Of a stretch of DNA of 36,845 nt, positions 5,072 through 36,252 are shown one piece after another. The position numbers and the translations under genes are program-made. The stretch comes from Hydrolagus affinis. Taxonomy: Eukaryota. The stretch covers positions 1 to 36,845 of the forward strand of contig JAAILG010005517.1 of assembly GCA_012026655.1 (NCBI GenBank). The letters run 5' to 3'. Position 1 is the stretch's first letter. Every line of letters begins with the position of its first letter. The notes under the pieces were generated by a model that was given only the letters and a program-made list of their open reading frames with translations, was not told the origin of the DNA and searched no databases.

Positions 5072-5801
5072 GTGAGTACTGATTTACACAATATCACCGA
5101 GACGCTCCCATGGAATCTTGCTGGACACTCAATTCCCCCAAATTCTGCTCCGTGACCTGCTCCAACTTTCAGAACCAACGCATTACCCGCCCCTCCGTTA
5201 TGAGACTTCCGTTCAGCCTTTCTGTCACAAACATCTGGATTTCCATCCCACATTAACTCCGCCTCACTCACAACCTTGTTTCCTTCAAAGCCACGTTTGA
5301 TGTCACCAGCGCAAACGCCCATGCCCTCCATCCGCACTGATCACTACTGCCAGTTTGGGTATATATCCTTTACTATCCGCTTTGAAAATTCCCCCTGTTG
5401 TGAAATGCGCTTGTAATATGTATTTGGTGCTGTTGTCCAGGACAGAGAGGGTGGGAGAGAGGCGAGGATAAATGGATGAGAGTAGAAAGGAGAATCTGTA
5501 GACTAGACAGTATCGGTATTCAGAGGGATTTGGGTTTCCGTGTACACCTGTCACAAAACTTTAGTATGCAGGTACAACAAGCAACTAGGAAGGTTAATGG
5601 CATGTTGACGATCATTGCAAAATATGTAGAGCAAAAGATTAAGGAAGTCTTGCTGCAATTGTTTAGTTCCTTGGTGAGACCGCACCTAGAATTTTTTGTG
5701 CAGGTTTTGTCTCATTATTTATTGTTGTTCTTCTCGGAGTGACGAATCACAAACACAAGCAAGCCCCGTACAGAAACTGGCCATTCAGACAATCTATATA
5801 G

Positions 5802-5864
<63 letters not shown>

Positions 5865-8800
5865 TGTGGGTGTGGGTGTGGGTGTGTGCGTGGGTGCGTG
5901 GGTGCGTGGGTGCGTGCGCGCGTGCGTGCGTGCGTGCGTGCGTGCGCGTGCGCGTGCGCGTGCGCGTGTGCGTGTGCGCGTGCGCGTGTGCGTGCGCGTG
6001 CGTGTTCCCCCCCCCCCAATTGGAGCCTTTTCGGTGATGACCTTAAAGGCTGCCCTGTATATAACGTCCATGATGGAGTGAGACAACAGGCAGATGATAT
6101 AACTTATTGTATAAATTACTTATCAATAATTCGTGTTCTGATCTTTTTATTCTTATGCAGTGATGTTCCTGGAGAGATAGCCTGTGGATTCTGAAGGTTA
6201 GTTGCAACTTTATCCGAAGAACACAAAGTAGTTTCTCTCTGTACATTAACTCAAACATGGTAAATAATCTTCTCAGTCACTATCGCAGAATGCTTTTATT
6301 CCTTTCACCCATACTCATTTGTTCGCTTGTGTTCTGAAAGCAATCTGTAACATCTTCTTTGTTTGAGTTTTGTTCTCTTTCTTTTCAATCTTGTTCTGTA
6401 CTCCCAAACAAATGCTCCATTAATGTAGTTTGGCATTTTTATATTATTGCCTTTTTTTTTGGTCTTTCTATACCACTTCCACGTCTTGTTTTTCTCACAG
6501 TGCCTGCCACTGCTTCATATTGCTTCTTCTTTCATATTCTTTTCTCGGTAATTGCTTTAGTGTTCTTTGTTTGATCTCCCTTGATGTTCATGTATCTGTT
6601 TATCTGCGTTTGTCTATTATCCAGCACAACCTGTTTTACTTGCCAGTGTTGGCTCTCCTCATTTCTCCTCCCAAAATGCATCACCTCACATATCTCTACA
6701 TTAACATTCATCTGCCATATAGCTGCCCATTTTACCATTCGGTGTGTATCTTCTTGTAGATGACTACTATCCTCCTCAGTATTAACTATTTTCCCTAACT
6801 TTGTATCATCTGTAAACTTCAAAATGGTACTCCCTATACCCAAATCTAAATTATTAATACTTAATATGAATTACTATAATTGCCCTGATATCTTCCAAGT
6901 TCTCTGTCTCTGTACCCATGGTCTGAATTGTGTGTACAGCCAGGTTAACGCATCTCTCAATATACTGGACACAGTCATCTCTGTTGGTGACTGTCCTTTA
7001 TCATCTGTTCGTCTATTCATGTAGTATAGTAATGCCAAATGTTTTTATTTTGCTCAAAGTTCTTCCACATTTTCTGCAACGTTTCATTGTTCTTTCCACC
7101 CTTGCTTTGTTGGGGAGTATCATCGTGACCATGTTCTGTGTTCTATAACCAACTGTTTTGTGTTTTGGAAATATATTCAGCGCCCACTAATTATGTGGCT
7201 CATTATGATTTATTAAGTCCTGAAGTATTCCATGCCTGGCTAATATTTAGTTACTCTTTGCTATCACGTTGCCTGCAGTTGTGATATTTCATACTGCCTA
7301 TTCGCTATACTTTGTGGTATGGACCTCCATCAATATATATTGTAACAGAAAAAATGTTGTTGTTTTTTCTTGATGCCATGTGTGGTTTCTGAAACTGCAC
7401 CAAAGCTTGATGGCATTCTCTATTTTGATTACATGCAAATGTACCCAAATGTCCTATGAATTTTCATATTCCCAATGGGTTTGTTTTAATATTTTCCCTT
7501 ATATATAATCTTCCTAAACTAATCAAGTTTTAGCTTTCCTTTTTAGTCAATGTATAATTTNNNNNNNNNNNNNNNNNNNNNNNNNNNNNNNNNNNNNNNN
7601 NNNNNNNNNNNNNNNNNNNNNNNNNNNNNNNNNNNNNNNNNNNNNNNNNNNNNNNNNNNNAGAGGGTTTGAGTGGGGTATGTGGCGGAATGTGTTTTATT
7701 TACCTGAGTGGCCTGTGTCTGTAGTTGTTGTCCTCTGATGGGGTTTTGTTTTCTTTGGTGTTGATTTGGTTCCTGCAGTTGATATGCCTTCAGGTTGGCT
7801 GTATCCAATAGGAGTGGCTGCTGTTCGCTGCGTTGTCTATGGGGGACGGCAGAGATGTGTTAGCGGATATGTTTGTGACATGGGCTGTGACAGTGCCTGT
7901 GAAAATGTGCTCTGGTGACGGAGGATACTGTGCGTCTGCTTTAGAGGGAACTGCCCTACAGTCAATCGTAGTCTGTGACTGTGACGTGTGGCTGCTGCTG
8001 GAGATGTGTGTTGAGGAGCTTGTGACATTGGTGGATAGGTGTTCTTGGTAAATATCGGTGTCCTAGGATTGATAATCTTCCTGGGGGTATCTTTGACTCG
8101 TGTGCTGAGCTTATTGATCAGTTGCCCGGAGGGCGAGAGGGGCGCAATGTGCGTTGCATCTGTTTTCTGGGGTGGATTGGCTGTAAATGGTGGCAGTGGT
8201 TATGGCTGGGGGCGTGTCACTGGGGTGTTGATCTATACATGAGCAGTCGGCCTAATCCCTGTGGTAGGGATTCGGTTTCTGGGATTTGGGATGGTCGGTG
8301 TGCGTACTTATATATGTTTAACCCGTGCTGATTCTGTGCTCCAGTGGGAATGTGCTAGTGTTGGGTGGGAAGACACTGTACCTGGAAGACCTGGATGCCA
8401 CTGGGTGTAGGTTTTGCTAGCAGGGACACTATGTCTTGGCAGTAAGGCTGCACATTGGAGAGTAGCTTCTGTGAAATGGTGGACCGGCGGGGACAGCTGG
8501 GGTCTATGAATTATGGATTTTGCATCTATGGCTCTTTCGTAGGGTAGTCCCTGTGCCTGGATTGAATGTCTGTTACCTGGCGGGCGTGGGTTTGTTGCTC
8601 TGTGGGGTGTGTGTCTCTTGTGGGTGTCTGTTCCTGGGGAGCTCTGTAGGAGGGTGGTGTTTGAATGTCGCTGGTTGTGCCCAAAGGGTGGGTCTACACA
8701 GAGCCTAGGGACATCCTCTGGACATGAAAGGCGCTATATCAATGTGTTGTTTTATTGATTGATTGAGAAATTCCCAAGCTCAGTGATGAATGGAATTGCA

Positions 8801-18620: not shown

Positions 18621-20319
18621 TTATCACTATTATTACAATAGGTTTGTTTTATTCACGTAATTGGCAGTGATTTAATTTACAGTTCATATCATATTCGAAC
18701 ATTTGCAGTCAACAGCAGTGCAGACCTATCCGTCAGCCAGCCGGGCTGGTCTGTCATCAGCATTCTATAGAGTCGCATCTAAATGTCTGTGTCAGGACAA
18801 GATAACAACAACAAATCGCAAGTATACAGTAACTTTTGTTCTTTGGATACAACGTCCCAAGTGACTGCACAGTGTGGGGTTTGTATCTGAGCTGGTGATT
18901 GCTCTTGGTGGGGCTCTTGGTGCTCTTGTGTGTGTTGGGGAGGGGGAGGTGGGGGGACTAGTGATGATATTTCAAATAGGAACGTTTTGAGTTAGGCCTG
19001 AAAGTCAGAATGTGACATGGGAATCCAATGTGAATCTAGGATGGAGTTACTGAATTTGGGAGAGAATAGGGTGATAGCCCATTTGTCAATTCTGGTTTTG
19101 GAAGTGCCGGGGACATGAAACATACTTAAAGGGGGGACGAGATTAAGAGTCATCGTTATATTAATAATAACAACATTATTCTTTCAATTTGGTTTGGAGC
19201 TTCTCACGTCGTCTTGGCATCCCATGGCTCCTCACAGCATATACACTAACTTGTATATGAACTGCGACAACCAGTTTCACACAGCAGTGTCCCACACACA
19301 GTCCTGAATTAACATGACCAATGTAATGTTGGATATCTTAGGCATTGTTTTCAGTGGTGTGCGGATAGGAAGCTTTATACTCTCTGCAATTGGTTAGTTA
19401 GAATGCATTTTTTCCATTGAGAGGGAGAGCACATTCCATTCGAATAGATGAGATATCCCATGTTTAGGTGAATTGCACAGAATTAGCAGGGATTTGTTTG
19501 GATTCTCTAAATATTTTGAGGTCCAATAGAATACACAGTTGAGCACAATGTAAAACAGTTGATAGTTACATACACTGCGTGTAAATATTGAAGATTGAGA
19601 TGGCTAGCAAGAAGGCGAGAATGGGGAGAAGCTGGTTGTGTTGTGTGAGCATGCTGAGCGGATAAATGTAGGGGTGGCTGTACCTACGATGCTCTCCCCA
19701 TTCATTCTGACCTAGCGTCAGACTTCACAACTGTGTCGAGCTCTGACGCACTACTCATTTGCAGCAGTGCTGTCTAAGTATATGCTGTTGTTGCTGTAAT
19801 TCAAAATACACAGGAGCAATTCAAACACAGAGCGCGCTGATGAGAATGACAAATATGTGCTGACAGCAGGGATAAAATTAGGTATTTAAAATTCCGCAGA
19901 GCACCTTAATACCAGTTTCCTGACTCACCCAATAACTGAAAGCAATAAGGCACTGAAAGGGGGTGGGTGGTAGGGGTGGGGCGGATGGGTTGTGGGGGTG
20001 TGGAGAGAGAATGCAATATTCCTCAAGTCCACGAAGACAGGCATTGACATGAAGGTCTGTAGTACAACCATATGTACAACAGTTGGCGGTGTTGCACTGT
20101 ATCCACATCTTGTGTTCACAAAAAAATAACTGCCCAGTGGCTGAATGCGGTAATACAGCTCCGATTGCACTCAATTCAGATATTATTCATATTTCAAGAA
20201 CAAAGCGCAAACAGTATGGGTTTGTTCATCACCGATTAAGTAAGATCATGTTTTGAGTTACTCCTCAGTGTTCTATTGTAAAGGTTCAATACTTCTTCAT
20301 TAGTTATCACAACACCAAC

Positions 20320-21130
20320 AACAACTTAAACTTCTAAAGCGCCTTACACGTAGGGAGGACGTCCCAAGGCGCTGCACAGGAGGCGTGTGACCCGAGCTGG
20401 GAGAGGAGTGTTCGGGAAGGGGTGAAGCACGTAAGGGAGGTCAAAAAATTCGGGTGGAACAAAAAGGCACCGTCGAAGAGGAAAGTCTTCAAACCAGCCT
20501 TGAAAGAGAAAAGGGAGGAAACAAAACGGAGCGATTGGGGGATGGAATTCCACAGGATGGGAGCGGAGAAACTGAAGGCCCGGCCTCCGATGGTGGGGCG
20601 GTTCGGGCGGGGGGCTTGGAGAAGGCCAATTCCTGCTGAATGATGGGTCCGGTTGGGCTTATATGGGGAGAGTCAATTGGTTAAGTAGGGCGGGGCAAGG
20701 CCGTGTAAGGCCTTGAAGGTGAGGACGAGGATCTTGAACTCGATCCTCTGGAGGATGGGGAGCCAGTGGAGACGGGCGAGGGTGGGAGGTATTTGGTCGC
20801 GGAGGCGTGTGCGGGATAATACATGGTCTGCAGAGTTTTGGATGATCTGCAGCCTGTGAATGGAGGAGCTGGGTAGGCCGACGAGGAGATAGTTTCCGTA
20901 GTCCAGCCGTGAGGTGATGTAAGTGAGCACGAGTGTTTCTGCAGCGTGGGGGGTGAGATAGTTGCGGAGCCTGGCAATGTTGTGTAGGTGGAAATAAGCG
21001 GTGCCGGTCAAGGCACGGATGTGGGGACGGAAGGAGAGTTTATGGTCGAACGTAATGCCGAGGTTCCTGACTGGCTTTGTGAGGTGGAGAGTACAGCCTT
21101 GGATGTTGAATTTGCCAATCTCTGGTCTGA
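20320..21130 (-). mobile_element. L2 LINE, 5'-truncated, about 0.8 kb, relatively young
   Basis: Open 153-aa ORF 20673-21134 (VRNLGITFD..LSFRPHI...SRLDYGN..LVGLP...RLHWLP..QRIEFKILVLTFKALHGLAPPYL). After a frameshift it continues GGRAFSFSAP.LWNSIP...LKTFLF, followed by the tail at about 20320-20375. Confidence 0.93.
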
Positions 21131-21510
21131 TCACGTGTGTATGTAATTAATAATTTCCCAATTGAATCCCAGGACATTACCTGTATTCATTTTAACAAAA
21201 TTGATGAATTGGTCACTTTCATCCACGAACCTTTGTGGGAATCTCCTGTGTTCAATTCTCTGACAGATTTCACCACAAATGTACGGTTAATTCACTTTAT
21301 AGTAAATTACGTGATCTTCCCACAAGATATGTGGAGTACGTGGAAACAGTTATATGAAATGCAATGATAATTATTATTGCTTTGCGACTCAGGTCAGTTT
21401 AATACTATCAAAATTTAGTGAGACTTAAAGCCGAGAACGGATTTACCTTTTTCTACATCTCCCCTGATATTTTGTGTAGTTATTGTGTGTTCAATTAACG
21501 ATAACAATTC

Positions 21511-21543
21511 TGCAGTACTGCATTACTACCGCCAGATGGTGGC
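21511..21543 (+). promoter_or_regulatory. Predicted CTCF site 1 (upstream motif + core)
   Basis: TGCAGTACT-6 bp-CTA-CCGCCAGATGGTGGC. One core mismatch to CCRSYAGRKGGCR. Confidence 0.6.
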
Positions 21544-21724
21544 GATGTTCAGTGTAACTGCCCACAAGTGAAATCCTTGTTCTCCTTGAGCTGAGAAGAG
21601 AAAGTTTGACCATTGTCAGAATCCTTCATAGTTTCCAACCAAACCCCGCCTCACACTCCCAAACCACGTGCGACAGTCTCTATTCTGATTTCCGATAAAG
21701 ATATTTCAGGTGCACATTTATTTG

Positions 21725-21835
21725 TGGAGTACGGGATTGCACGGTTTTGGGGAGAGAACTAGTGAGTGGGATTGAATTGCTCTTTTCAAAAGGCGGCACC
21801 CACACAATGGACCGAATGGCCTCCTTTTTGTGTGC
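21725..21835 (+). mobile_element. CR1 3' UTR fragment
   Basis: gggagagaactagtgagtgggattga...atggaccgaatggcctcct, similar to 34340-34440. Confidence 0.65.
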
Positions 21836-21853
21836 AAATTAACGCTAATAATA

Positions 21854-21886
21854 TTCAGTACCACTTTACTACAGCGAGATGGCGGC
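21854..21886 (+). promoter_or_regulatory. Predicted CTCF site 2 (upstream motif + core)
   Basis: TTCAGTACC-6 bp-CTA-CAGCGAGATGGCGGC. Same spacing and orientation as site 1; two core mismatches. Confidence 0.5.
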
Positions 21887-22512
21887 GATGCACTGTGTAA
21901 TTTCTCACTAAGTTCTGAGTAAATTCCCTTGTCCTCATTTAGCAGAGAAGAACCCGTATGAGCAGAATTGTTCTGTAGGTGGGTAACACATTGTCAGAAT
22001 TTTTCCCAGTGGTTCCCACTGCTGATGACAACACAGCCCGGCCTGGCTCATCGGCAGGACTTTTGCAGAGCAGATCAGAACGAATCTTCGAATCTTCACG
22101 ATTTCTCCGTTGCCTTTGTCCAGCTATATATTGACCTCCATTCTATTGCCCTGCTTCCTTGGAATCAATCAAGGAGATGTCCTTTACTTTAATGGTTGGA
22201 ACGCTTGCCTGTTAGGAACATGTGAGTTACGTTTCGAGCTGGGAGGACCATTGTGTGTTTTCATCATCCACAAACATGCCTCTGTTATACCAGCTGTAAG
22301 TGTTAACCCTAATGATTGTCGATTGACGAATCAACGTAGCACAAGCCAAAATACAGGAAGTGACATTTCAGTAAAGCCATCACTCAGAATATAGTTATAA
22401 CCTGCACAGCTAAAAGCATTCGACAAATATTCATAAACGCTTGTCAGGATGATTGGATGATTTCCTGTTGCATTCCCCTGACAGATTTTGACTTGACTCA
22501 GCGAGGATAAGA

Positions 22513-22959
22513 ATGAAGCCTTGTTTCACTGCAATACATATTATTCTTAGTTTAATGATTCTGATAATCTGTAAGTAAAGCTCCAGTTTGGACAAACACA
22601 TTCTTGTTTTCCTATTAGCTAAATTTTTGTTGCAGCTTTTTTCCAAGTTTCTTTGCTGGAATGTCCATGACTGTTCCCCCAGGTTTGTTGGCTGAAAACG
22701 AAGTGACACAGAGACCACTGTCCATTACAAAGAATGAAAATGTAAATACATCTATAGAGTGCACCATCACTGCGTCAATCCCAATCTTTCAATGTTACAA
22801 ACAGCATGGAAACGGCTCCATCCAATTACTAGTGTTGGGATGAAGAGAGATGAAGCAGAAGGTGAGGATAAATAATGCTTTGACTGTTGGAAGAAATAGC
22901 ACTTTATCGATCCGAGACGTGCGAGTGTCTGACTCCGCCACTTACTTCTGTGCGGAGAG
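22513..22959 (+). pseudogene. TRAV: TCR alpha/delta V segment V1 (family A), pseudogene
   Basis: Leader 22513-22570 (MKPCFTAIHIILSLMILII | GTAAGT). V exon 22683-22959 reads ENEVTQRP...IECT...FQCYKQHGNGSIQLLVLG*REMKQKVRIN...STLSIRDVRVSDSATYFCAE. In-frame TGA at 22841-22843; the conserved Trp is replaced by Cys. Confidence 0.9.
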
Positions 22960-22998
22960 CACAGTGATGTGGGTATAACAAGGATCTGTAAAAAAAAA
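22960..22998 (+). other. 23-RSS of V1
   Basis: CACAGTG + 23 bp + AAAAAAAAA (degenerate nonamer). Confidence 0.8.
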
Positions 22999-23004
22999 AC
23001 GTGC

Positions 23005-23340
23005 TGGGGTTCCTGCAGCTCAATGGTTAGAGAACCTGCGTTGCAAACTAGAGATCATGAGCTGGAATCGCCGCAGAGTGAAACACTCAGCATTCTGCCT
23101 TACTCCACACACATCTATTTACATTGAAATGTGGAGGAACCCGGTTTGTGATCGATTGACCGAATCGCTTTCCTGGGTNNNNNNNNNNNNNNNNNNNNNN
23201 NNNNNNNNNNNNNNNNNNNNNNNNNNNNNNNNNNNNNNNNNNNNNNNNNNNNNNNNNNNNNNNNNNNNNNNNNNNNNNACACTTGTGGGACGCAGATGTG
23301 CGGAATCGGCTGCCGCATTTAGCAGCAAATAACAATTTAA
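23005..23340 (+). mobile_element. tRNA-headed SINE spanning N-gap 23179-23278
   Basis: cctgcagctcaatggttagag...ccttactccacac...[N]...ttgtgggacgc...aatcggctgccgcattt. Confidence 0.7.
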
Positions 23341-23835: not shown

Positions 23836-24702
23836 ATGCTCCTGTGGGCGAAGTGTGCTGTGCTTACAGTATCTCTCAGCTTACTTTCTCGTATGTAACC
23901 TTCTTATACCTTTACCATTTTCCCATAATATCTGCTAAAGGCTTCAGTAGAGCAAAACTAATAACAATATTAATGATAATTGGGATTCTCTAACGTGTTT
24001 CTTCACAAATTTGAGACGTCTCAACGCACTCCACATTATAATGTAAAGCGAATTGACAATGTATTCTCTGGGTGCATCGTGAGAGTCAATTTCGCTCAAC
24101 AGTGCCCCCAAAATTTTTAACGGATTCAATGACGAAATTATTATTATTTTTATTGGTTTACATATATGAATGATTAGCTCCAGAATAACAATCCACGAAT
24201 TGACTAACATTTGGATTTCTATTTCCTAGTAGTCTCACAAAGCCATGCGGAGTAAAGAATTTTAGCTGAGGTATTGCACTGCTCAGGAATCGAATCTGGC
24301 TCTACTCTCTTATGTGGCTAGTTTTGTAACCATCGAGCAGCAGGATCCCTATGTAATTCAATCTTGATTCTCAAAAACCTTGTTGATTTCAATCACAGGA
24401 AGCAGCTTGCAGGAAATGGGGAAACAATCGATGACTGAAAGATCGATTCTAGAGGCACAAGATGTGAAATTGTCCTGCAGCTTCAAGAAAATCATTAATG
24501 CGTATGCTCTCTTCTGGTACAGACAAGCTTCCAGCCACGCTCCTGTGTATCTATTGCGGGGAACAGCGACTAACGTTCAAAGGAACCCCGACTTCCCAGC
24601 TCGATTTTCCTCCACTGTCAATAAATCGAGTGAAGATTTCGTACTGAGGATTGGCACAGTCCTGATCAGGGACATTCCTGTGTATTACTGTGCCATGGAG
24701 CC
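23836..24702 (+). CDS. TRAV: TCR alpha/delta V segment V2 (family B), open reading frame
   Basis: Leader 23836-23890 (MLLWAKCAVLTVSLSLLS | GTATGT). V exon 24399-24702 reads SSLQEMGKQ...VKLSCSF...LFWYRQ...PARFSS...DIPVYYCAME with no stops. Confidence 0.88.
24240..24350 (-). mobile_element. SINE head in the V2 leader intron
   Basis: Reverse complement reads gggatcctgctgctcgatggttac...gattcgattcctgagc...tctttactccgc. Confidence 0.55.
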
Positions 24703-24741
24703 CACACTGCTGCTGTGCTATGGGGGCTCTGTACAAAAACA
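24703..24741 (+). other. 23-RSS of V2
   Basis: CACACTG + 23 bp + ACAAAAACA. Confidence 0.92.
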
Positions 24742-26531: not shown

Positions 26532-26990
26532 ATGATGCAGCATTTCACTGCAATATACGCTGTTATTAATTTCTTTGTATTATTTTTGTGTAAGTGCGTT
26601 ATGTGTTTGAAAAAAACAGCACTTTCACGTTCCACTGCTGATTATGTAGAAATTAGCTTTACCGATATCATTCGAATTTCATTCAAAGATTGTTCATTTC
26701 TATTCCCCAGGTGTCTTAGCTGAACGTGATGTGTCACAGAATCCTCAGGCGCTGACAGAGAATGCAAATGGAAATGTGTCTATGGAGTGCAGAACCACTG
26801 GATACGTCGAATACTTTCATTGGTACAAACAGTATGGAAATGGTTCCATCCAGTACTTGGTGATGGGAACCAGAGAGATGAAGGAAGGGCCGAGGATAAG
26901 TGCCTTGGCTGACACAAACGAGAAAAACAGCACACTATCAATCAAAGACGTGCGAGTGACAGACACCGCCATTTACTTCTGTGAAACAAG
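26532..26990 (+). CDS. TRAV: TCR alpha/delta V segment V3 (family A), open reading frame
   Basis: Leader 26532-26589 (MMQHFTAIYAVINFFVLFL | GTAAGT). V exon 26711-26990 reads VLAERDVSQNPQ...MECRTTGYVEYFHWYKQYGNGSIQYL...STLSIKDVRVTDTAIYFCET. Confidence 0.92.
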
Positions 26991-27029
26991 CACAGTGCTC
27001 CGTGTCTCAGAGGAGCCTGTACAAAAGCA
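26991..27029 (+). other. 23-RSS of V3
   Basis: CACAGTG + 23 bp + ACAAAAGCA. Confidence 0.93.
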
Positions 27030-28156: not shown

Positions 28157-28992
28157 ATGTATATTTACCTGGCAGCAGGCATCGTAATCTTCGTTGGTAA
28201 GCCGCAAATTCATATCATATATTCATGCACATATTACCCAATGTGTATTTTTTCTTATTGCATGAATTATCCAATAAATTGCAGGGCTTGAAAAGCGGTA
28301 GCGTCCTGTAGCTCAGTGAGTAGGGAGGGAGAATCTCCAGGTAAGTTTACTTGCGCCACAAACAAGTCCATGTTTCAGTAAGCTTAAATAGGAACCCTAC
28401 TGTAGGTAAACTTACTGATCGCGTCTCTGAAGCATGTAATTTCAAAAAGTTAGTCGTATATAAATCACTCAATTAACTAGTTTTTTTTTTTGACTGATAT
28501 GCGCAATTGGTTCTGATGTTTTGCCCAGAAAATTTGCTTAATTAATATTTCGTGAAGCCATTTGAGGTGTCGCCGATACGGGCTACATCGCTGTATGGAA
28601 TGTAAGGATTACTAATATCAATATTGTTTTTATTATTATCATTCCTATTTATATTATTATTACTGATTTATTTAATTTCTAGGATTTTGTGATGGAGACG
28701 CTGTGACACAGCTCCAATCCAATGTGACAGCAGATCAAGGGGAAGATGCAATAATGCAGTGCAATTATACAGCAGCAATGGACACCAATATATATCTGTT
28801 CTGGTACCGTCACTGTCCCAACTCAGCTCCAGAATATATCCTAAGCACATCCGTCAGGAACAATCCACAATACACAGACTTTGCCAAAGGACATTTCTCA
28901 GCAACAGTGGATAAAGTGGGGAGAACCGTCCCATTAAATATATCCCAAGTGAGAGTCACAGACACGGCGGTGTATTAATGTGCACTGAGCCC
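28157..28992 (+). pseudogene. TRAV: TCR alpha/delta V segment V4 (family C), pseudogene by a single nonsense change
   Basis: Leader 28157-28196 (MYIYLAAGIVIFV | GTAAGC). V exon from 28683 reads FCDGDAVTQ...MQCNY...LFWYRH...TVPLNISQVRVTDTAVY*CALS. TAA at 28976-28978 replaces a Tyr codon. Confidence 0.92.
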
Positions 28993-29031
28993 CACAGAGA
29001 CACAGATCAACGTTACCGCCCTACAAAAACT
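28993..29031 (+). other. 23-RSS of V4
   Basis: CACAGAG + 23 bp + ACAAAAACT. Confidence 0.9.
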
Positions 29032-29032
29032 A

Positions 29033-29385
29033 CCATGTGGAGCTCAGTGGTTACAGACTCGCCTCACAGGCAAGATACAAGGGTTTGAATTCACGGCTGA
29101 GCGAAATGTGGGTCAAGTTTTCTTACCCCATGCATATGTAGCTGTTTACATGGCAGTAAGTCGGAACTTTGTTGTTAGCGGATTAGGGATTCGCTATTCC
29201 GGGCGTAATAATTCCTTCAGAATATTGATGATATTAATAAATTGGTCATTCATTCCAATGGATCTCTGATGTGCAAACTTGGCTTTCGCGTTTCTCCCAC
29301 GCAAAAAGAAGTCAAAGCGTTTATATTACATTCTGTAAAGCGCTATGTTGCACCTCTAATATATGATATGGTGATATATCACAGC
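29033..29385 (+). mobile_element. tRNA-headed SINE, near full length
   Basis: agctcagtggttac...gggtttgaattc...caagttttcttacccc...gtaaagcgct tail. Confidence 0.7.
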
Positions 29386-29636: not shown

Positions 29637-29669
29637 TTCTGTACCTGCAATCCACCGGCAGATGGCGCA
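29637..29669 (+). promoter_or_regulatory. Predicted CTCF site 3 (upstream motif + core)
   Basis: TTCTGTACC-6 bp-CCA-CCGGCAGATGGCGCA. The core matches the consensus fully. Confidence 0.65.
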
Positions 29670-30618
29670 CTAAGCACATACAGTATCTAACATGAGCAGC
29701 AACTTGCCTGGTTCCTTTGTGTAACTAACTTACTTGTCAGCTATTGCAGGTGCTTCCTGTTACAGTTGGTGTTGGAGCTTCATACACACTATGGCCTCCG
29801 CAGCTGAAAAGTGCTAATGTTTGTTTGCCTAAATATGTTATTGTTGTTCCAGAATCAATTGGCGTATCACGTTTTCTATCTTATCGTCTTACCCCCAATA
29901 TAATCAACCTCTATTGAGTAATTTTCACTCTGGTCTTCAACATGTTAGGTTTTCTCAATGGATATATGGGCATTTTCTTTGGTAAATTGGGGGAAGGAGA
30001 ATACAATTTTTCAGTTTAATTTTAAATTGCACAATTAAAGCTATTCTTAATTTGGGCCATCCTGCCTTGGATTCAGTTCCAAACAGGACTGCAAAGCGAT
30101 AAAAGTTATAAGAGTTCCAGCCTTGTACAACATGCCTTCAAGCAGGAGTTGCAAATAAAGCGTTCATTATGAATAATTAAAAAATATATGTCTGCACTTT
30201 GAAGACAAATACAATCGGCAATTTGACTCACCCAGAAATATTCACGAATTGTGGCTCCATCTAAGTTTTCTTGATAATATACCCTTGACGCAGTCATGAA
30301 TTAGAATTTCAGTCCAGACCATCATCTCAATGTAAAGTCTTGAACCTTGAACCAAAAGCCTCCCGACTCATTAGGTGCACTACCAGCAACACAGGCAGTT
30401 TGTCAACTTGATTACAGGAAGTAAATCTTTGTTTGTGCACGAAACATACCCCTATTCCTTCCATTCTAGAGCTGATCACTTGTAGCCAATCATCAGCTGA
30501 TTAAGGCGAAGATACATTGGTTATTGTGGAACGCCTACAATATTCTTGAATAACCCACTGCCTGCACACATCACATAAGCCGCTGCCTCACTACTTGTAT
30601 CTGAAGCAGCCGAACAGA

Positions 30619-30668: not shown

Positions 30669-31538
30669 ATGACAGGTCAATGTCATTTACTGATAGCAAT
30701 CCTCACCATAGCCAGTAAGTAAGTGTGGACATGCCCAGTGCATGTGATTTGGTATTACAAGATGTGAAAAGCGCTATATCACATGCCCGTATCATTATTA
30801 TATAATATTCGGTAGTGTAGCAATTAGAGCACTCCAATGAAAAAGAAAATACCTCAGCGTAACTCACGGCAGGGCTAATTGTTGGACAATTTGCTCTACA
30901 CCAACACACGACTTTGTGAGTCTACCAGTAATTAGGAACTGTATTCAACTTCCAGCTCGAGTCTTCTCTCCAAAAATTATTGAAATACCAATATTTTGAG
31001 CGCTCACTCTCGAACTGTTTATTGAACACTGTTGTGCACAAATAGCTGTGAGGTTCGTCTGAAAAGGCGATTGGAGGCAATTCATTTGATATTATATTCA
31101 TTGGGTATTTTGTATATATTTTTGTAACGTCTCATTATTGTGAAAATTCGAGCACAAACACTCGATATTAGTTGGTATTATTCGAATTGCACATTAATCT
31201 TTGCCTTACCTACTGAAAAACAAGTTGTTTTTTTATTGCAGAAGTTATGGGGAAAGATGTAATATACCAATATCCTCCTGAGATAAGGGAGTTTGAAGGA
31301 AAAGACGTGAGAATAAACTGCAATTATTCCGCAATCTATGCTGCCTTCTGGTACAGGCAATATCCAGATGGAGGTCTTCAGTACTTGCTGAAGATTTATA
31401 ACTCGGGAAAGGTAGACAAAGCTCCTGATATTCCGTCCGCTTCACTGCCAAGCTGGACAAGGAGAATAATGTATTTAACTTGCAAATACTCAGGGCTGAT
31501 GTGGGTGACGGCGACATGTATTACTGTGCACTGGAGCC
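30669..31538 (+). pseudogene. TRAV: TCR alpha/delta V segment V5 (family D), frameshifted pseudogene
   Basis: Leader 30669-30714 (MTGQCHLLIAILTIA | GTAAGT). V exon 31242-31538 reads VMGKDVIYQYP...INCNYS...FWYRQYPDGGLQYLL...PDIP, then a 1-nt frameshift near 31433-31440, then RFTAKLDKENNVFNLQILRADVGDGDMYYCALE. Confidence 0.9.
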
Positions 31539-31577
31539 CACATTGTGACAGGAGGACAGATACACTGTACAAAAACT
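31539..31577 (+). other. 23-RSS of V5
   Basis: CACATTG + 23 bp + ACAAAAACT. Confidence 0.9.
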
Positions 31578-32927: not shown

Positions 32928-33371
32928 ATGAAACTAAGTTACCAAGCAACGTGTATTATTTAAAATTGCATGCTGTCGCTCTTCTGTAAGTAGAGTGCGA
33001 GTTTGCAAAAGACATCTTTGTTTCCTCTTAAACAATTATAAGTTTTGTTGGAGATATTTTCCGAATGTCTTTCCAAGAATGTTCGTGTCTATTCCCCTGG
33101 TATCTTGGCTGAAAGAGAAGTGTCACAGAGACCTCAGTTGCTGACAGGGAATGAAAATGGAAATGTATATATAGAGTGCAACACCACGTTGTACAACTCA
33201 ACTTTTCTATGGTACAAACATTATGGAAACGGCTCCATCCATTTGCTGTTGAAGGGAAGCAGAGTGATCAAGATGGTGTAGAGGATAAGTGCTTTGGCTG
33301 ATACAAAGGAGAAGAACAATCAGAGACGTGCGAGTGACAGACAAAACCACTTACTTCTGTGCAGCAGAGAA
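32928..33371 (+). pseudogene. TRAV: TCR alpha/delta V segment V6 (family A), multiply disabled pseudogene
   Basis: Leader 32928-32985 has TAA at 32961-32963. The acceptor is mutated to TG (33098-33099). The V exon 33100-33371 has TAG at 33279-33281 and an 11-nt deletion in FR3 relative to V3, and ends ..TYFCAAE. Confidence 0.9.
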
Positions 33372-33410
33372 CACAGTGCTGCGTGTCTGAGAGGAGCCTA
33401 TACACAAAGA
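33372..33410 (+). other. 23-RSS of V6
   Basis: CACAGTG + 23 bp + ACACAAAGA. Confidence 0.85.
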
Positions 33411-35503: not shown

Positions 35504-36213
35504 ATGGCAATGTGTATCTATGTGGCAGCAGCCATCATCACCTTGTCAGGTAACCATTCTATCTTTATTTGTTTCCAAAATTATTATTCAATGCCTATGC
35601 TTTATCGCTAACGATACATAATAATACAGAAAGAGATTGAAGAGTTGGAGTGTCCATTTTTTCATTGTTTATAACACTGGCTTCACAGCCGAGTGAATCG
35701 TGCTGTATCTCACAATCCGAGAGGATTCCCTGACAGGACAGGCCGAAACATTACACTAACTATATTGTTTTTTGCTAATACTATTCTGTGAATTGAATGG
35801 AGACGTATCAACGATTTAATAAAGCGCCGTACGAAACACTGATTGGAATTGTTGCTGTTGTAATGAATGTAATGAATGATGATGTGTTTCTGTTTTCTAG
35901 GGCTTTGTGCAGGAGATTCTGTGACACAGCTCCAATCTACTGTGACAGTGAGTGAAGGAGAATATGCCTATCTGCTGTGTAATTATACAGCTACAAGCGG
36001 CGGCAATCCATACATATCCTGGTACCGTCACTATACCAACACAGCTCCAGAATATATCCTTAAGTTACTCATCAGCAGCAACAAGGAATATCCTGCAGAA
36101 TTTGCAAAAGAACGTTTCTCAACTAATTTGGATAAAGCGCGGCAAACCGTGCCATTGAATATATCCCTAGTGACAGTGACAGACTCTGCTGTGTATTACT
36201 GTGCGCAGAGCAC
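35504..36213 (+). CDS. TRAV: TCR alpha/delta V segment V7 (family C), open reading frame
   Basis: Leader 35504-35549 (MAMCIYVAAAIITLS | GTAACC). V exon 35901-36213 reads LCAGDSVTQLQSTVTVSEGE...LLCNY...ISWYRH...ERFS...TVPLNISLVTVTDSAVYYCAQS. Confidence 0.93.
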
Positions 36214-36252
36214 CACAGAGGCACAGATCAGTGTTCCTGCCGTACAAATACC
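36214..36252 (+). other. 23-RSS of V7
   Basis: CACAGAG + 23 bp + ACAAATACC. Confidence 0.9.

What the first reader, a model, noticed from the sequence alone, without database searches (positions are those of the whole stretch)
21500..21985. Tandem CTCF pair with upstream motif between the innate receptor and the first V: candidate locus boundary
Seen: a duplicated unit of about 130 bp (21500-21620 and 21843-21985). Each copy has T(G/T)CAGTAC(T/C), then exactly 18 bp from motif start to core start, then CCGCCAGATGGTGGC or CAGCGAGATGGCGGC. Both are on the + strand, 0.6-1.0 kb before the V1 ATG. Established: CTCF zinc fingers 9-11 read a TGCAGTACC-like motif 5-6 bp upstream of the core; forward motifs loop to downstream convergent sites; and CTCF sites organise mammalian Tcra/Tcrd V-to-J contacts. 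Inference: an insulator or loop anchor that separates the receptor gene from the RAG-scanned domain and points into the V array.
Basis: partly seen in the sequence, partly recalled or inferred. Interest (0 to 1): 0.7.

Follow-up and report, generated by a model that had tools for sequence, protein, structure and literature searches.

The report
CTCF-type sites before TCR V segments
A chimaera-type fish carries textbook two-part binding motifs for the genome-folding protein CTCF in front of its T-cell-receptor V segments, all pointing into the array as in mouse, which suggests (from sequence alone) that this way of organising receptor genes is very old; nothing shows the pair is a special locus boundary.

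Summary
Two diverged copies of a 160-195 bp unit (21483-21640 and 21826-22020, 71-73% identical) each carry a TGCAGTNCC-like motif exactly 18 nt before a CTCF-like core, on the + strand, 985 and 642 nt before the V1 start codon.

The copies differ in quality. Copy 1 has a good core (p about 2e-6, upstream motif 7/8). Copy 2 is weak here (p about 5e-5). The letters that spoil it are not carried by most homologous contigs from related species. With the homologues' two core letters the core scores p about 1.5e-7.

Four such two-part matches were seen against 0.08 expected, and none of 1000 shuffles gave three or more. The unit is not a high-copy transposon. The 81 nt around copy 1 keeps far more exact 31-mers in two other organisms than its surroundings do.

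Best reading: forward-facing CTCF sites that belong to the V cassettes, as in mouse Tcra/Tcrd. The "locus boundary" claim is unsupported, and V1 is a pseudogene. No occupancy data exist.

The parts
21483..21640 (+). Unit copy 1 of the duplicated element
   Evidence: blastn/MAFFT against copy 2: 71-73% identity, E 1e-12 to 1e-18. Baseline depth in four DNA runs, so not a high-copy repeat.
21511..21544 (+). Copy 1 two-part CTCF-type motif: upstream TGCAGTACT (21511-21519), 6-nt spacer, 19-nt core matrix window 21526-21544 (15-mer CCGCCAGATGGTGGC at 21529-21543)
   Evidence: Core 15.7 bits, p 1.9e-6; upstream motif 7/8 at offset 18. The 81 nt around it hold 3/5 sampled 31-mers in organism B and 2/5 in organism C, against 0.07 for the surrounding 1.2 kb.
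21826..22020 (+). Unit copy 2 of the duplicated element
   Evidence: Collinear contigs of another species span both copies (X7 record 25, 21488-21943).
21854..21887 (+). Copy 2 two-part motif, weakened in this window: TTCAGTACC (21854-21862) and core CAGCGAGATGGCGGC (21872-21886). It also reads as a YY1-like GAGATGGCGGC.
   Evidence: Core 9.2 bits, p 4.8e-5. Homologous contigs carry G at 21855, C at 21873 and C at 21876. With the two core letters the core scores 19.6 bits, p 1.5e-7. YY1 consensus: 1 mismatch, 1 match against 0.31 expected.
20058..20091 (+). Copy 0: decayed third homologous copy (TGTAGTACA, then core CAACAGTTGGCGGTG at offset 18), on the far side of the LINE fragment
   Evidence: Core 9.6 bits, upstream motif 6/8. 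75.6% identity to copy 2 over 41 nt reaching past the core, E 4e-4.
29637..29670 (+). Apparently independent two-part CTCF-type site between V4 and V5: TTCTGTACC (29637-29645), core CCGGCAGATGGCGCA (29655-29669)
   Evidence: Best core in the window, 17.2 bits, p 7.5e-7. Upstream motif 6/8 at offset 18, the best offset between 10 and 30. Flanks are not detectably homologous to the unit.
22514..22999 (+). V1, a TCR alpha/delta-type V pseudogene: leader exon from ATG 22514, V exon about 22683-22959, heptamer CACAGTG at 22960, 23-nt spacer, A-run nonamer
   Evidence: In-frame TGA at 22841-22843 and FQCYKQ in place of the conserved W. RSS found. V-family relatives in Callorhinchus milii. TCR alpha V chains are prominent among the solved-structure matches, alongside antibody light and heavy-chain V domains.
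20673..21134 (-). LINE reverse-transcriptase fragment lying between copy 0 and copy 1
   Evidence: ORF translation. Depth about 1e5 against a baseline of about 50 in run X1.
21718..21803 (.). Moderately repeated element between copy 1 and copy 2. A second stretch of similarly raised depth at 21202-21373 shares only a 14-mer with it.
   Evidence: Depth 2-4e3 against a baseline of about 50 in X1. Shared A[T/A]TTGTGGAGTACG 14-mer.

Best explanation
The stretch holds CTCF-binding elements of the vertebrate two-part type: an upstream motif read by zinc fingers 9-11, a 6-nt spacer, and a core read by fingers 3-7. They belong to a T-cell-receptor alpha/delta V cassette.

A unit carrying such a site was duplicated locally at least twice, giving copies at 20058, 21511 and 21854. 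In this genome only the middle copy (21511-21544) keeps a strong motif. The other two have decayed, and the V segment behind them is a pseudogene. An apparently independent site of the same kind and strand lies at 29637-29670, inside the array.

All sites face the same way as the V segments, that is, towards where J and C should lie. The inferred mechanism is that bound CTCF, with its N-terminus facing downstream, halts cohesin extruding from the J-C side. That would tether nearby V segments to the recombination centre and partition the array, as the V-upstream CTCF sites of mouse Tcra/Tcrd do.

Shown here: the motif, spacing, strand, duplication, low copy number and a local conservation signal. 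Inferred: occupancy, cohesin stalling and any effect on recombination. Because it is the most upstream intact site in this window it may act as the edge in practice, but nothing marks it as a dedicated boundary.
For: Motif statistics: copy 1 core p 1.9e-6 and site 3 p 7.5e-7 are the two best cores in 36.8 kb. Four two-part matches were found, all + strand and all at offset 18, against 0.078 expected. Two or more occurred in 0.2% of 1000 shuffles and three or more in none. Offset 18 is the best of offsets 10-30 at every site.

Layout: it equals the 35-bp MA1930 architecture of 10 + 6 + 19, with the upstream consensus CTGCAGTTCC and a linker of about 8 nt to the 15-mer core. The two-part motif is shared from lamprey to human.

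Between copy 2 and site 3, identity is 8/9 in the upstream motif, 10/15 in the core and only 2/9 in the linker (read). Similarity therefore follows the motif, not descent.

Homologues in related genomes carry the consensus letters at the three spoiled positions of copy 2. In organism B this holds for 4, 4 and 3 of about 4 contigs; in X1-X3 roughly a third to all of the depth. With the two core letters, the core scores p 1.5e-7.

Not a high-copy repeat: the unit sits at baseline depth, while the LINE is about 1e5. No tRNA or Rfam family matches.

Conservation: the 81 nt around copy 1 hold 3/5 sampled 31-mers in organism B and 2/5 in organism C. The 1.2-kb stretch scored 0.07 in organism B, and organism C was not listed at all.

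Mouse precedent: 144 bound sites in the Tcra/d V region, many upstream of V promoters, 129 of 144 pointing towards J-C.
Against: There are no binding or contact data for any cartilaginous fish locus.

The core matrix was recalled from memory, and copy 1 has two sub-optimal letters (G for A after CC, T for C after GG). By plain consensus it is not significant.

Three of the four matches are one family by descent, so only two are independent events, and the 4/4 strand agreement carries little weight.

Copy 2 and copy 0 have decayed at about the neutral rate, and V1 is dead. Constraint on this particular cassette may therefore be relaxed.

The 31-mer conservation signal rests on only 5 sampled, overlapping words, and several paralogues raise the chance of a match.

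Five of the seven V segments in the window have no such site nearby.
Confidence: 0.6

Rival explanations
1. Dedicated locus boundary. The tandem pair would be an insulator placed specifically between the innate receptor gene and the first V, separating the receptor gene from the RAG-scanned domain.
For: These are the most upstream CTCF-type motifs of the V region in the window, and no strong motif lies in the receptor gene region. The forward orientation fits a left-hand anchor. Tandem sites strengthen insulation in reporter assays. The ancestral unit probably had two or three good sites in a row.
Against: Only one of the three copies is intact here. The stretch with V1 has about 4-8 collinear homologues in related genomes, so the unit is part of a V cassette rather than a unique edge element. 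An equal site lies inside the array. The neighbouring receptor gene was judged probably dead by an earlier, unchecked note, and V1 is dead, so there is little to insulate. Other pieces of this genome reportedly also place non-TCR receptor genes beside V segments (unchecked), so this need not be the end of the array.
Confidence: 0.15
2. Neutral relic. The motifs are sequence-competent but unoccupied leftovers, copied along with a V cassette and now decaying, with no present function in this genome.
For: Copy 0 and copy 2 have lost key core letters. The three well-supported window-specific changes in copy 2 all hit motif positions, at roughly the neutral density of change. V1 has a stop codon and has lost the conserved Trp. 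A LINE and other repeats have been inserted between the copies.
Against: Copy 1 keeps a strong motif. Its 81-nt surroundings keep many more exact 31-mers in two other organisms than the flanks do. An apparently independent site with the same layout exists at 29637-29670.
Confidence: 0.2
3. A site for another factor. The conserved block would be a YY1 site (AAGATGGCGGC-like) or a CAGATG E-box, acting as a promoter or enhancer element of the V cassette rather than through CTCF.
For: Copy 2 reads GAGATGGCGGC, one mismatch from the YY1 consensus. Copy 1, site 3 and (inferred from the letters) the homologues' copy 2 contain CAGATGG. YY1 and E-proteins are known regulators of antigen-receptor loci (background knowledge; YY1 is named in PMC6746451).
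Against: The YY1-like match is not significant (1 match against 0.31 expected; 29% of shuffles reach it). Copy 1, the conserved copy, has ATGGTG, which weakens the YY1 core. Neither factor explains the TGCAGTNCC-like motif at a fixed 18-nt offset in the unrelated site 3.
Confidence: 0.05

Closest known systems
V-associated CTCF-binding elements of the mouse Tcra/Tcrd locus (Shih/Krangel and Feeney laboratories; PMC5859386)
   Same: A CTCF motif lies several hundred bases upstream of V segments of a TCR alpha/delta-type array. The orientation is towards J-C, as for 129 of 144 bound sites in mouse. Some V segments have a site and some do not.
   Different: This is motif prediction only, in a holocephalan, with no ChIP. 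The array is very compact, with one V about every 2.2 kb. The site sits in a locally triplicated unit of which two copies have decayed. The V behind it is a pseudogene.
Vertebrate two-part CTCF site (core plus upstream or M2 motif; JASPAR MA1930; Nakahashi 2013 and Schmidt 2012 as cited in PMC5504073 and PMC12885311)
   Same: A TGCAGTNCC-like 9-mer is followed by a 6-nt spacer and a 19-nt core on the same strand. The core keeps CC..CAG.TGG.G.
   Different: After CC the core has G instead of A, in both copy 1 and site 3. The extended matrix itself was not available, so the upstream part was scored by consensus only.
Clustered tandem CTCF sites at strong boundaries (for example the Igh 3' CBE array, or the IL3 and alpha-globin insulators)
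   Same: Several same-strand sites lie within about 1.8 kb, and the ancestral form was probably two or three good sites. Multiple copies increase insulation in reporter assays.
   Different: Only one intact site remains here. No evidence of a domain border exists.
Transposon-borne CTCF sites (for example SINE B2 in mouse; Schmidt 2012)
   Same: The motif spread by duplication of the DNA that carries it.
   Different: The carrier is a low-copy segment (about 4-8 homologues) that is collinear with a V segment. It is not a high-copy retroelement and has no tRNA or Rfam match.

Membership tests
Vertebrate two-part CTCF-binding site | Core motif matching the CTCF matrix at a stringent threshold (FIMO p<1e-5 to 1e-6) | tested here: met
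   Copy 1 p 1.9e-6 and site 3 p 7.5e-7. Copy 2 (4.8e-5) and copy 0 (4.0e-5) pass only p<1e-4. The matrix was recalled from memory, though its column sums are consistent.
Vertebrate two-part CTCF-binding site | Upstream TGCAGTNCC-type motif on the same strand, 5-6 nt before the 19-nt core | tested here: met
   Scores of 7/8, 7/8, 6/8 and 6/8, all with a 6-nt spacer (offset 18). No shuffle of 1000 gave three or more such sites. Layout as described.
Vertebrate two-part CTCF-binding site | Occupancy by CTCF in vivo or binding in vitro | not testable with these tools
   No ChIP, CUT&Tag or EMSA data are available for this organism.
V-associated CTCF sites of antigen-receptor loci | Location within a rearranging V array, near V segments, oriented towards J-C | tested here: met
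   There are seven + strand V segments, three of them with 23-spacer RSS found by the scan. All sites are on the + strand, upstream of V1 and between V4 and V5. The position of J-C is inferred from V orientation, not seen.
V-associated CTCF sites of antigen-receptor loci | Recurrence with V cassettes across paralogues and species | tested here: inconclusive
   Collinear homologues (about 4-8 per genome) carry both units ahead of a V1-like leader, and there is a local 31-mer excess at copy 1. Full homologous sequences could not be fetched.
Insulator / contact-domain boundary | A contact-domain border or enhancer-blocking activity at the site | not testable with these tools
   No Hi-C or reporter data. 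Indirect evidence argues against a unique boundary element.
Insulator / contact-domain boundary | Cluster of several strong same-orientation sites | tested here: not met
   Only one of the three clustered copies is strong in this window.
Transposon-derived CTCF site | Carrier sequence is a high-copy dispersed repeat | tested here: not met
   Units sit at baseline depth (about 45-55 in X1), against 1e5 for the adjacent LINE and 2-4e3 for neighbouring repeats. There are only three copies in the window.
YY1 site | Significant match to AAGATGGCGGC in the conserved copy | tested here: not met
   Only copy 2 matches with up to 1 mismatch, and 29% of shuffles do as well. Copy 1 has ATGGTG.

The most novel reading that the evidence does not exclude
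[quoted passage not shown] If so, control of V(D)J recombination by loop extrusion would be as old as the rearranging receptors themselves. The cassette upstream of V1 would preserve an ancestral tandem 'double lock' of two or three such sites that spread by cassette duplication.
Probability: 0.3. Interest if true: 0.65.

Novelty: new member of a known kind. Interest (0 to 1): 0.4.

Why it matters
Work on CTCF and cohesin in V(D)J recombination comes mostly from mouse and human. Searches of the held paper library found nothing on CTCF sites in cartilaginous-fish antigen-receptor loci.

A compact chimaera V array, with one V about every 2.2 kb, carrying canonical two-part sites that point towards J-C would make a question testable: is the CTCF-guided architecture of receptor loci ancestral to jawed vertebrates, or was it added later as loci grew?

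It also gives a small natural experiment. Three sister copies of one site are in different states of decay, which allows binding and insulation assays on near-identical sequences.

On its own, a predicted CTCF site is ordinary. The value lies in the lineage and in the orientation and position pattern.

Tried and rejected
- High-copy transposon or SINE origin of the unit: rejected. The unit sits at baseline depth in four DNA runs while adjacent repeats are 50 to 2000 times higher. No Rfam or tRNA match. No further copies in the window.
- A larger perfect tandem repeat of about 380 nt: rejected. Only the 160-195 nt units align, and the DNA between them includes an unrelated repeat.
- The unit recurring before the other V segments of the window: not found.
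- YY1 as the main reading: not significant.
- A minus-strand CTCF reading of the near-palindromic copy 1: 9.3 bits against 15.7 on the + strand, and it lacks the invariant AG.
- Coding exon or small RNA: by eye, only 10-11 codon ORFs start at the ATGG of the core. Nothing relevant in Rfam; the only hit (snoRNA GlsR14, 22425-22484, E 0.77, far below its gathering score) lies outside the units.
- CpG retention as a proxy for germline hypomethylation: the numbers are too small to say anything.
- Fetching orthologous or paralogous cassettes failed. The closest V proteins are UniRef-only Callorhinchus milii entries with no contig on record, and a metagenome scan for the unit found nothing.
- The upstream part could be scored only by consensus, because the extended JASPAR matrices were not available to me.

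Full report
**Setting**

The window is vertebrate DNA. Earlier unchecked notes call it a chimaera-type cartilaginous fish. My protein search agrees: the only relatives of the V3 exon are four Callorhinchus milii Ig-like proteins at 56-64% identity.

Seven V segments lie on the + strand, at 22682-22975, 24380-24709, 26689-27027, 28676-29053, 31223-31545, 33081-33387 and 35876-36220. Where the simple scan finds an RSS it has a 23-nt spacer. TCR alpha V domains are prominent among the solved-structure matches, together with antibody light- and heavy-chain V domains. A same-strand translocon array with 23-spacer signals fits TCR alpha/delta.

V1, the segment behind the finding, is a pseudogene. 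It has an in-frame TGA at 22841-22843 and Cys in place of the conserved Trp of WYKQ. Upstream lie a LINE reverse-transcriptase fragment at 20673-21134 on the minus strand and, further left, the LRC-like receptor gene described in earlier notes.

**Observation**

- Copy 1: TGCAGTACT at 21511-21519 and CCGCCAGATGGTGGC at 21529-21543.
- Copy 2: TTCAGTACC at 21854-21862 and CAGCGAGATGGCGGC at 21872-21886.
- The offset from motif start to core start is 18 nt in both, both are on the + strand, and they lie 985 and 642 nt before the ATG at 22514.

The two stretches are truly homologous: 21483-21640 against 21826-22020, 71-73% identity, E 1e-12 to 1e-18, with two indels. Because they are homologous, the shared spacing is inherited and counts once.

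**Motif quality**

I scored the window with the JASPAR MA0139.1 count matrix. The matrix was recalled from memory, but its column sums of 908-913 are self-consistent, and the result agrees with a plain consensus search.

| Site | Matrix window | Core score (bits) | p |
|---|---|---|---|
| Copy 1 | 21526-21544 | 15.7 | 1.9e-6 |
| Copy 2 | 21869-21887 | 9.2 | 4.8e-5 |
| Site 3 | 29652-29670 | 17.2 | 7.5e-7 |

Copy 1 is the second best site in 73,654 tested positions. Copy 2 has A in place of the nearly invariant second C, and G where C/T is required. The window holds 15 hits at that level, against 7.4 expected from the threshold and 8.9 in shuffles. On the minus strand the near-palindromic copy 1 scores only 9.3.

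**Two-part layout**

According to the literature held here:

- The upstream motif resembles CTGCAGTTCC and is read by zinc fingers 9-11.
- It is separated from the 15-nt core by a linker of about 8 nt, which includes a TGG-like triplet (PMC12885311).
- The 35-bp JASPAR matrix MA1930 is built as 10 upstream + 6 spacer + 19 core (PMC12081859).
- The two-part motif is shared by lamprey, chicken and human (PMC5504073).

Here the T of TGCAGT lies 15 nt before the 19-nt matrix window, which gives exactly a 6-nt spacer.

I scanned both strands for a core of at least 7.45 bits together with at least 6/8 of TGCAGTNCC at offset 17 or 18. This gave four hits, all on the + strand and all at offset 18:

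| Site | Matrix start | Core (bits) | Upstream match |
|---|---|---|---|
| Copy 0 | 20073 | 9.6 | 6/8 |
| Copy 1 | 21526 | 15.7 | 7/8 |
| Copy 2 | 21869 | 9.2 | 7/8 |
| Site 3 | 29652 | 17.2 | 6/8 |

One thousand dinucleotide-preserving shuffles gave a mean of 0.078 such hits. Two or more occurred in 0.2% of shuffles and three or more in none. At each site, offset 18 gives the best upstream match of all offsets from 10 to 30.

**How many independent events**

The hit at 20073 is a third, decayed copy of the same unit. It is 75.6% identical to copy 2 over 41 nt that run past the core into the flank, with E 4e-4. It is separated from copy 1 by the LINE fragment and another repeat.

Site 3 shows no detectable flank homology to the unit. 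Compared letter by letter with copy 2, it shares 8/9 letters of the upstream motif, 10/15 of the core and only 2/9 of the linker (read). The similarity therefore follows the CTCF motif and not common descent.

Conservatively there are two independent events, which the shuffles give a probability of about 0.002.

**Is the unit a transposon?**

I laid Logan contigs of four DNA runs, at 80% likeness or more, on 20600-23170. In run X1 the depths were:

- LINE fragment: about 1e5.
- 21202-21373 and 21718-21803: 2-4e3.
- Both CTCF-bearing units: 45-55, the same baseline as V1 itself, from some 4-8 contigs per position.

Long pieces are collinear with the window across both units and on into the V1 leader. 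Examples from X7 are record 25 (21488-21943), record 28 (21917-22677) and record 24 (21271-21612), at roughly 85-88% identity.

The unit is therefore a low-copy segment that travels with a V cassette. It is not a dispersed repeat. Rfam and ARAGORN find nothing relevant.

**State of copy 2 elsewhere**

Within the copy 2 motif, the only well-supported differences between the window and the laid contigs are 21855 T>G, 21873 A>C and 21876 G>C. In organism B they appear in 4, 4 and 3 of about 4 contigs. In the closer runs X1-X3 they account for between about a third and all of the depth, depending on run and position.

These are exactly the three letters that spoil the motif, and copy 1 has G, C, C at the corresponding places. 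With the two core letters restored for scoring only, the core reads CTACCGCCAGATGGCGGCG and scores 19.6 bits, p 1.5e-7. With G at 21855 the upstream motif becomes a perfect TGCAGTACC.

The ancestral cassette therefore most likely carried two strong two-part sites about 340 nt apart, and perhaps three. This window's copy 2 has decayed, in keeping with the dead V1 behind it. One caveat applies: the tool lists only the best-supported differences, so I cannot exclude other, rarer changes in the homologues.

**Conservation of copy 1**

For the 1201-nt stretch 21300-22500, organism B (X7-X10) holds 0.07 of the sampled 31-mers. The closest runs hold 0.13-0.18.

For the 81 nt around copy 1 (21490-21570), organism B and runs X4-X6 hold 3 of 5 sampled words and X3 holds 2 of 5. 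A further organism C (X13) also holds 2 of 5, although it was not listed at all for the long stretch.

With a per-word background of 0.07, three of five has a probability of about 3e-3 if the words were independent. They overlap, and several paralogues exist, so a fair estimate is nearer 1e-2. This points to constraint centred on copy 1, but it rests on five words.

**Interpretation**

Copy 1 and site 3 are sequence-competent CTCF sites of the high-affinity two-part class, and they face the same way as the V segments.

[quoted passage not shown] The chimaera sites reproduce that position and orientation.

By the convergent rule (established knowledge, also stated), a forward site blocks cohesin arriving from its 3' side. 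It would therefore pair with reverse sites near J-C or the enhancer, which are outside this window. Occupancy, cohesin stalling and any effect on recombination are inferred, not shown.

**The boundary claim**

Several results argue against a dedicated locus boundary:

- Only one of the three clustered copies is intact.
- The unit belongs to a cassette present several times per genome.
- An equal site lies inside the array.
- V1 is dead, and an earlier unchecked note judged the neighbouring receptor gene probably dead.
- Earlier unchecked notes report other non-TCR receptor genes abutting TCR V segments on other pieces of this fragmented genome, so "first V" is uncertain.

The site may still be the outermost anchor in practice. 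Only contact maps and a contiguous assembly can tell.

**Rival explanations**

- YY1: copy 2 reads GAGATGGCGGC, one mismatch from the consensus, but 29% of shuffles give such a match. The conserved copy 1 has ATGGTG.
- E-box: a CAGATG E-box is far too common to carry weight.
- Neither YY1 nor an E-box explains the fixed upstream motif at site 3.
- Neutral relic: this reading remains a serious possibility for this particular cassette (about 0.2), given the decay of two copies.

**Novelty**

CTCF sites at TCR V segments are known in mammals. I found no paper in the held library dealing with CTCF in cartilaginous-fish antigen-receptor loci.

This is therefore a new, predicted member of a known kind. 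It is moderately interesting because it makes the antiquity of CTCF-guided receptor-locus architecture testable, and because it offers three sister sites in graded states of decay.

Noticed in passing
window 29637-29670: The best CTCF core in the window (p 7.5e-7), with an upstream-type motif at the canonical offset. It is on the + strand between V4 and V5 and was not part of the finding. It shows no detectable homology to the duplicated unit.
   Followed up: partly
window 22514-22999: V1 is a pseudogene. It has an in-frame TGA at 22841-22843 and TGT (Cys) at 22793-22795 in place of the conserved Trp of WYKQ. Its RSS looks intact (CACAGTG, 23-nt spacer, A-run).
   Followed up: yes
window 31223-31545: V5 seems to lose its frame after about FWYRQYPDGGLQYLLKIYNSGKVDKAPDIP. 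The ORF translation runs into unrelated residues instead of the usual ...YYCA end, so it is probably another pseudogene.
   Followed up: no
window 21202-21373 and 21718-21803: Two short stretches have 50-80 times the baseline depth in all four DNA runs. They share the 14-mer A[T/A]TTGTGGAGTACG. This is a moderately repeated element of unknown type, flanking the CTCF units.
   Followed up: partly
window 23000-23093: Directly behind the V1 RSS nonamer the depth rises several-fold and the sequence looks like a tRNA-derived SINE head (GGTTCCTGCAGCTCAATGGTTAGAG...). ARAGORN calls no tRNA.
   Followed up: no
window 21478-21833: The table of best-supported differences from the laid contigs lists none in these 356 nt, which cover copy 1 and the spacer. 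The flanks show about one per 10-30 nt. This could be real conservation or a result of how the table ranks and truncates entries. I could not resolve it.
   Followed up: no
window 5700-6100: A long (TG/CA)n-type microsatellite produces several spurious ORFs on both strands.
   Followed up: no
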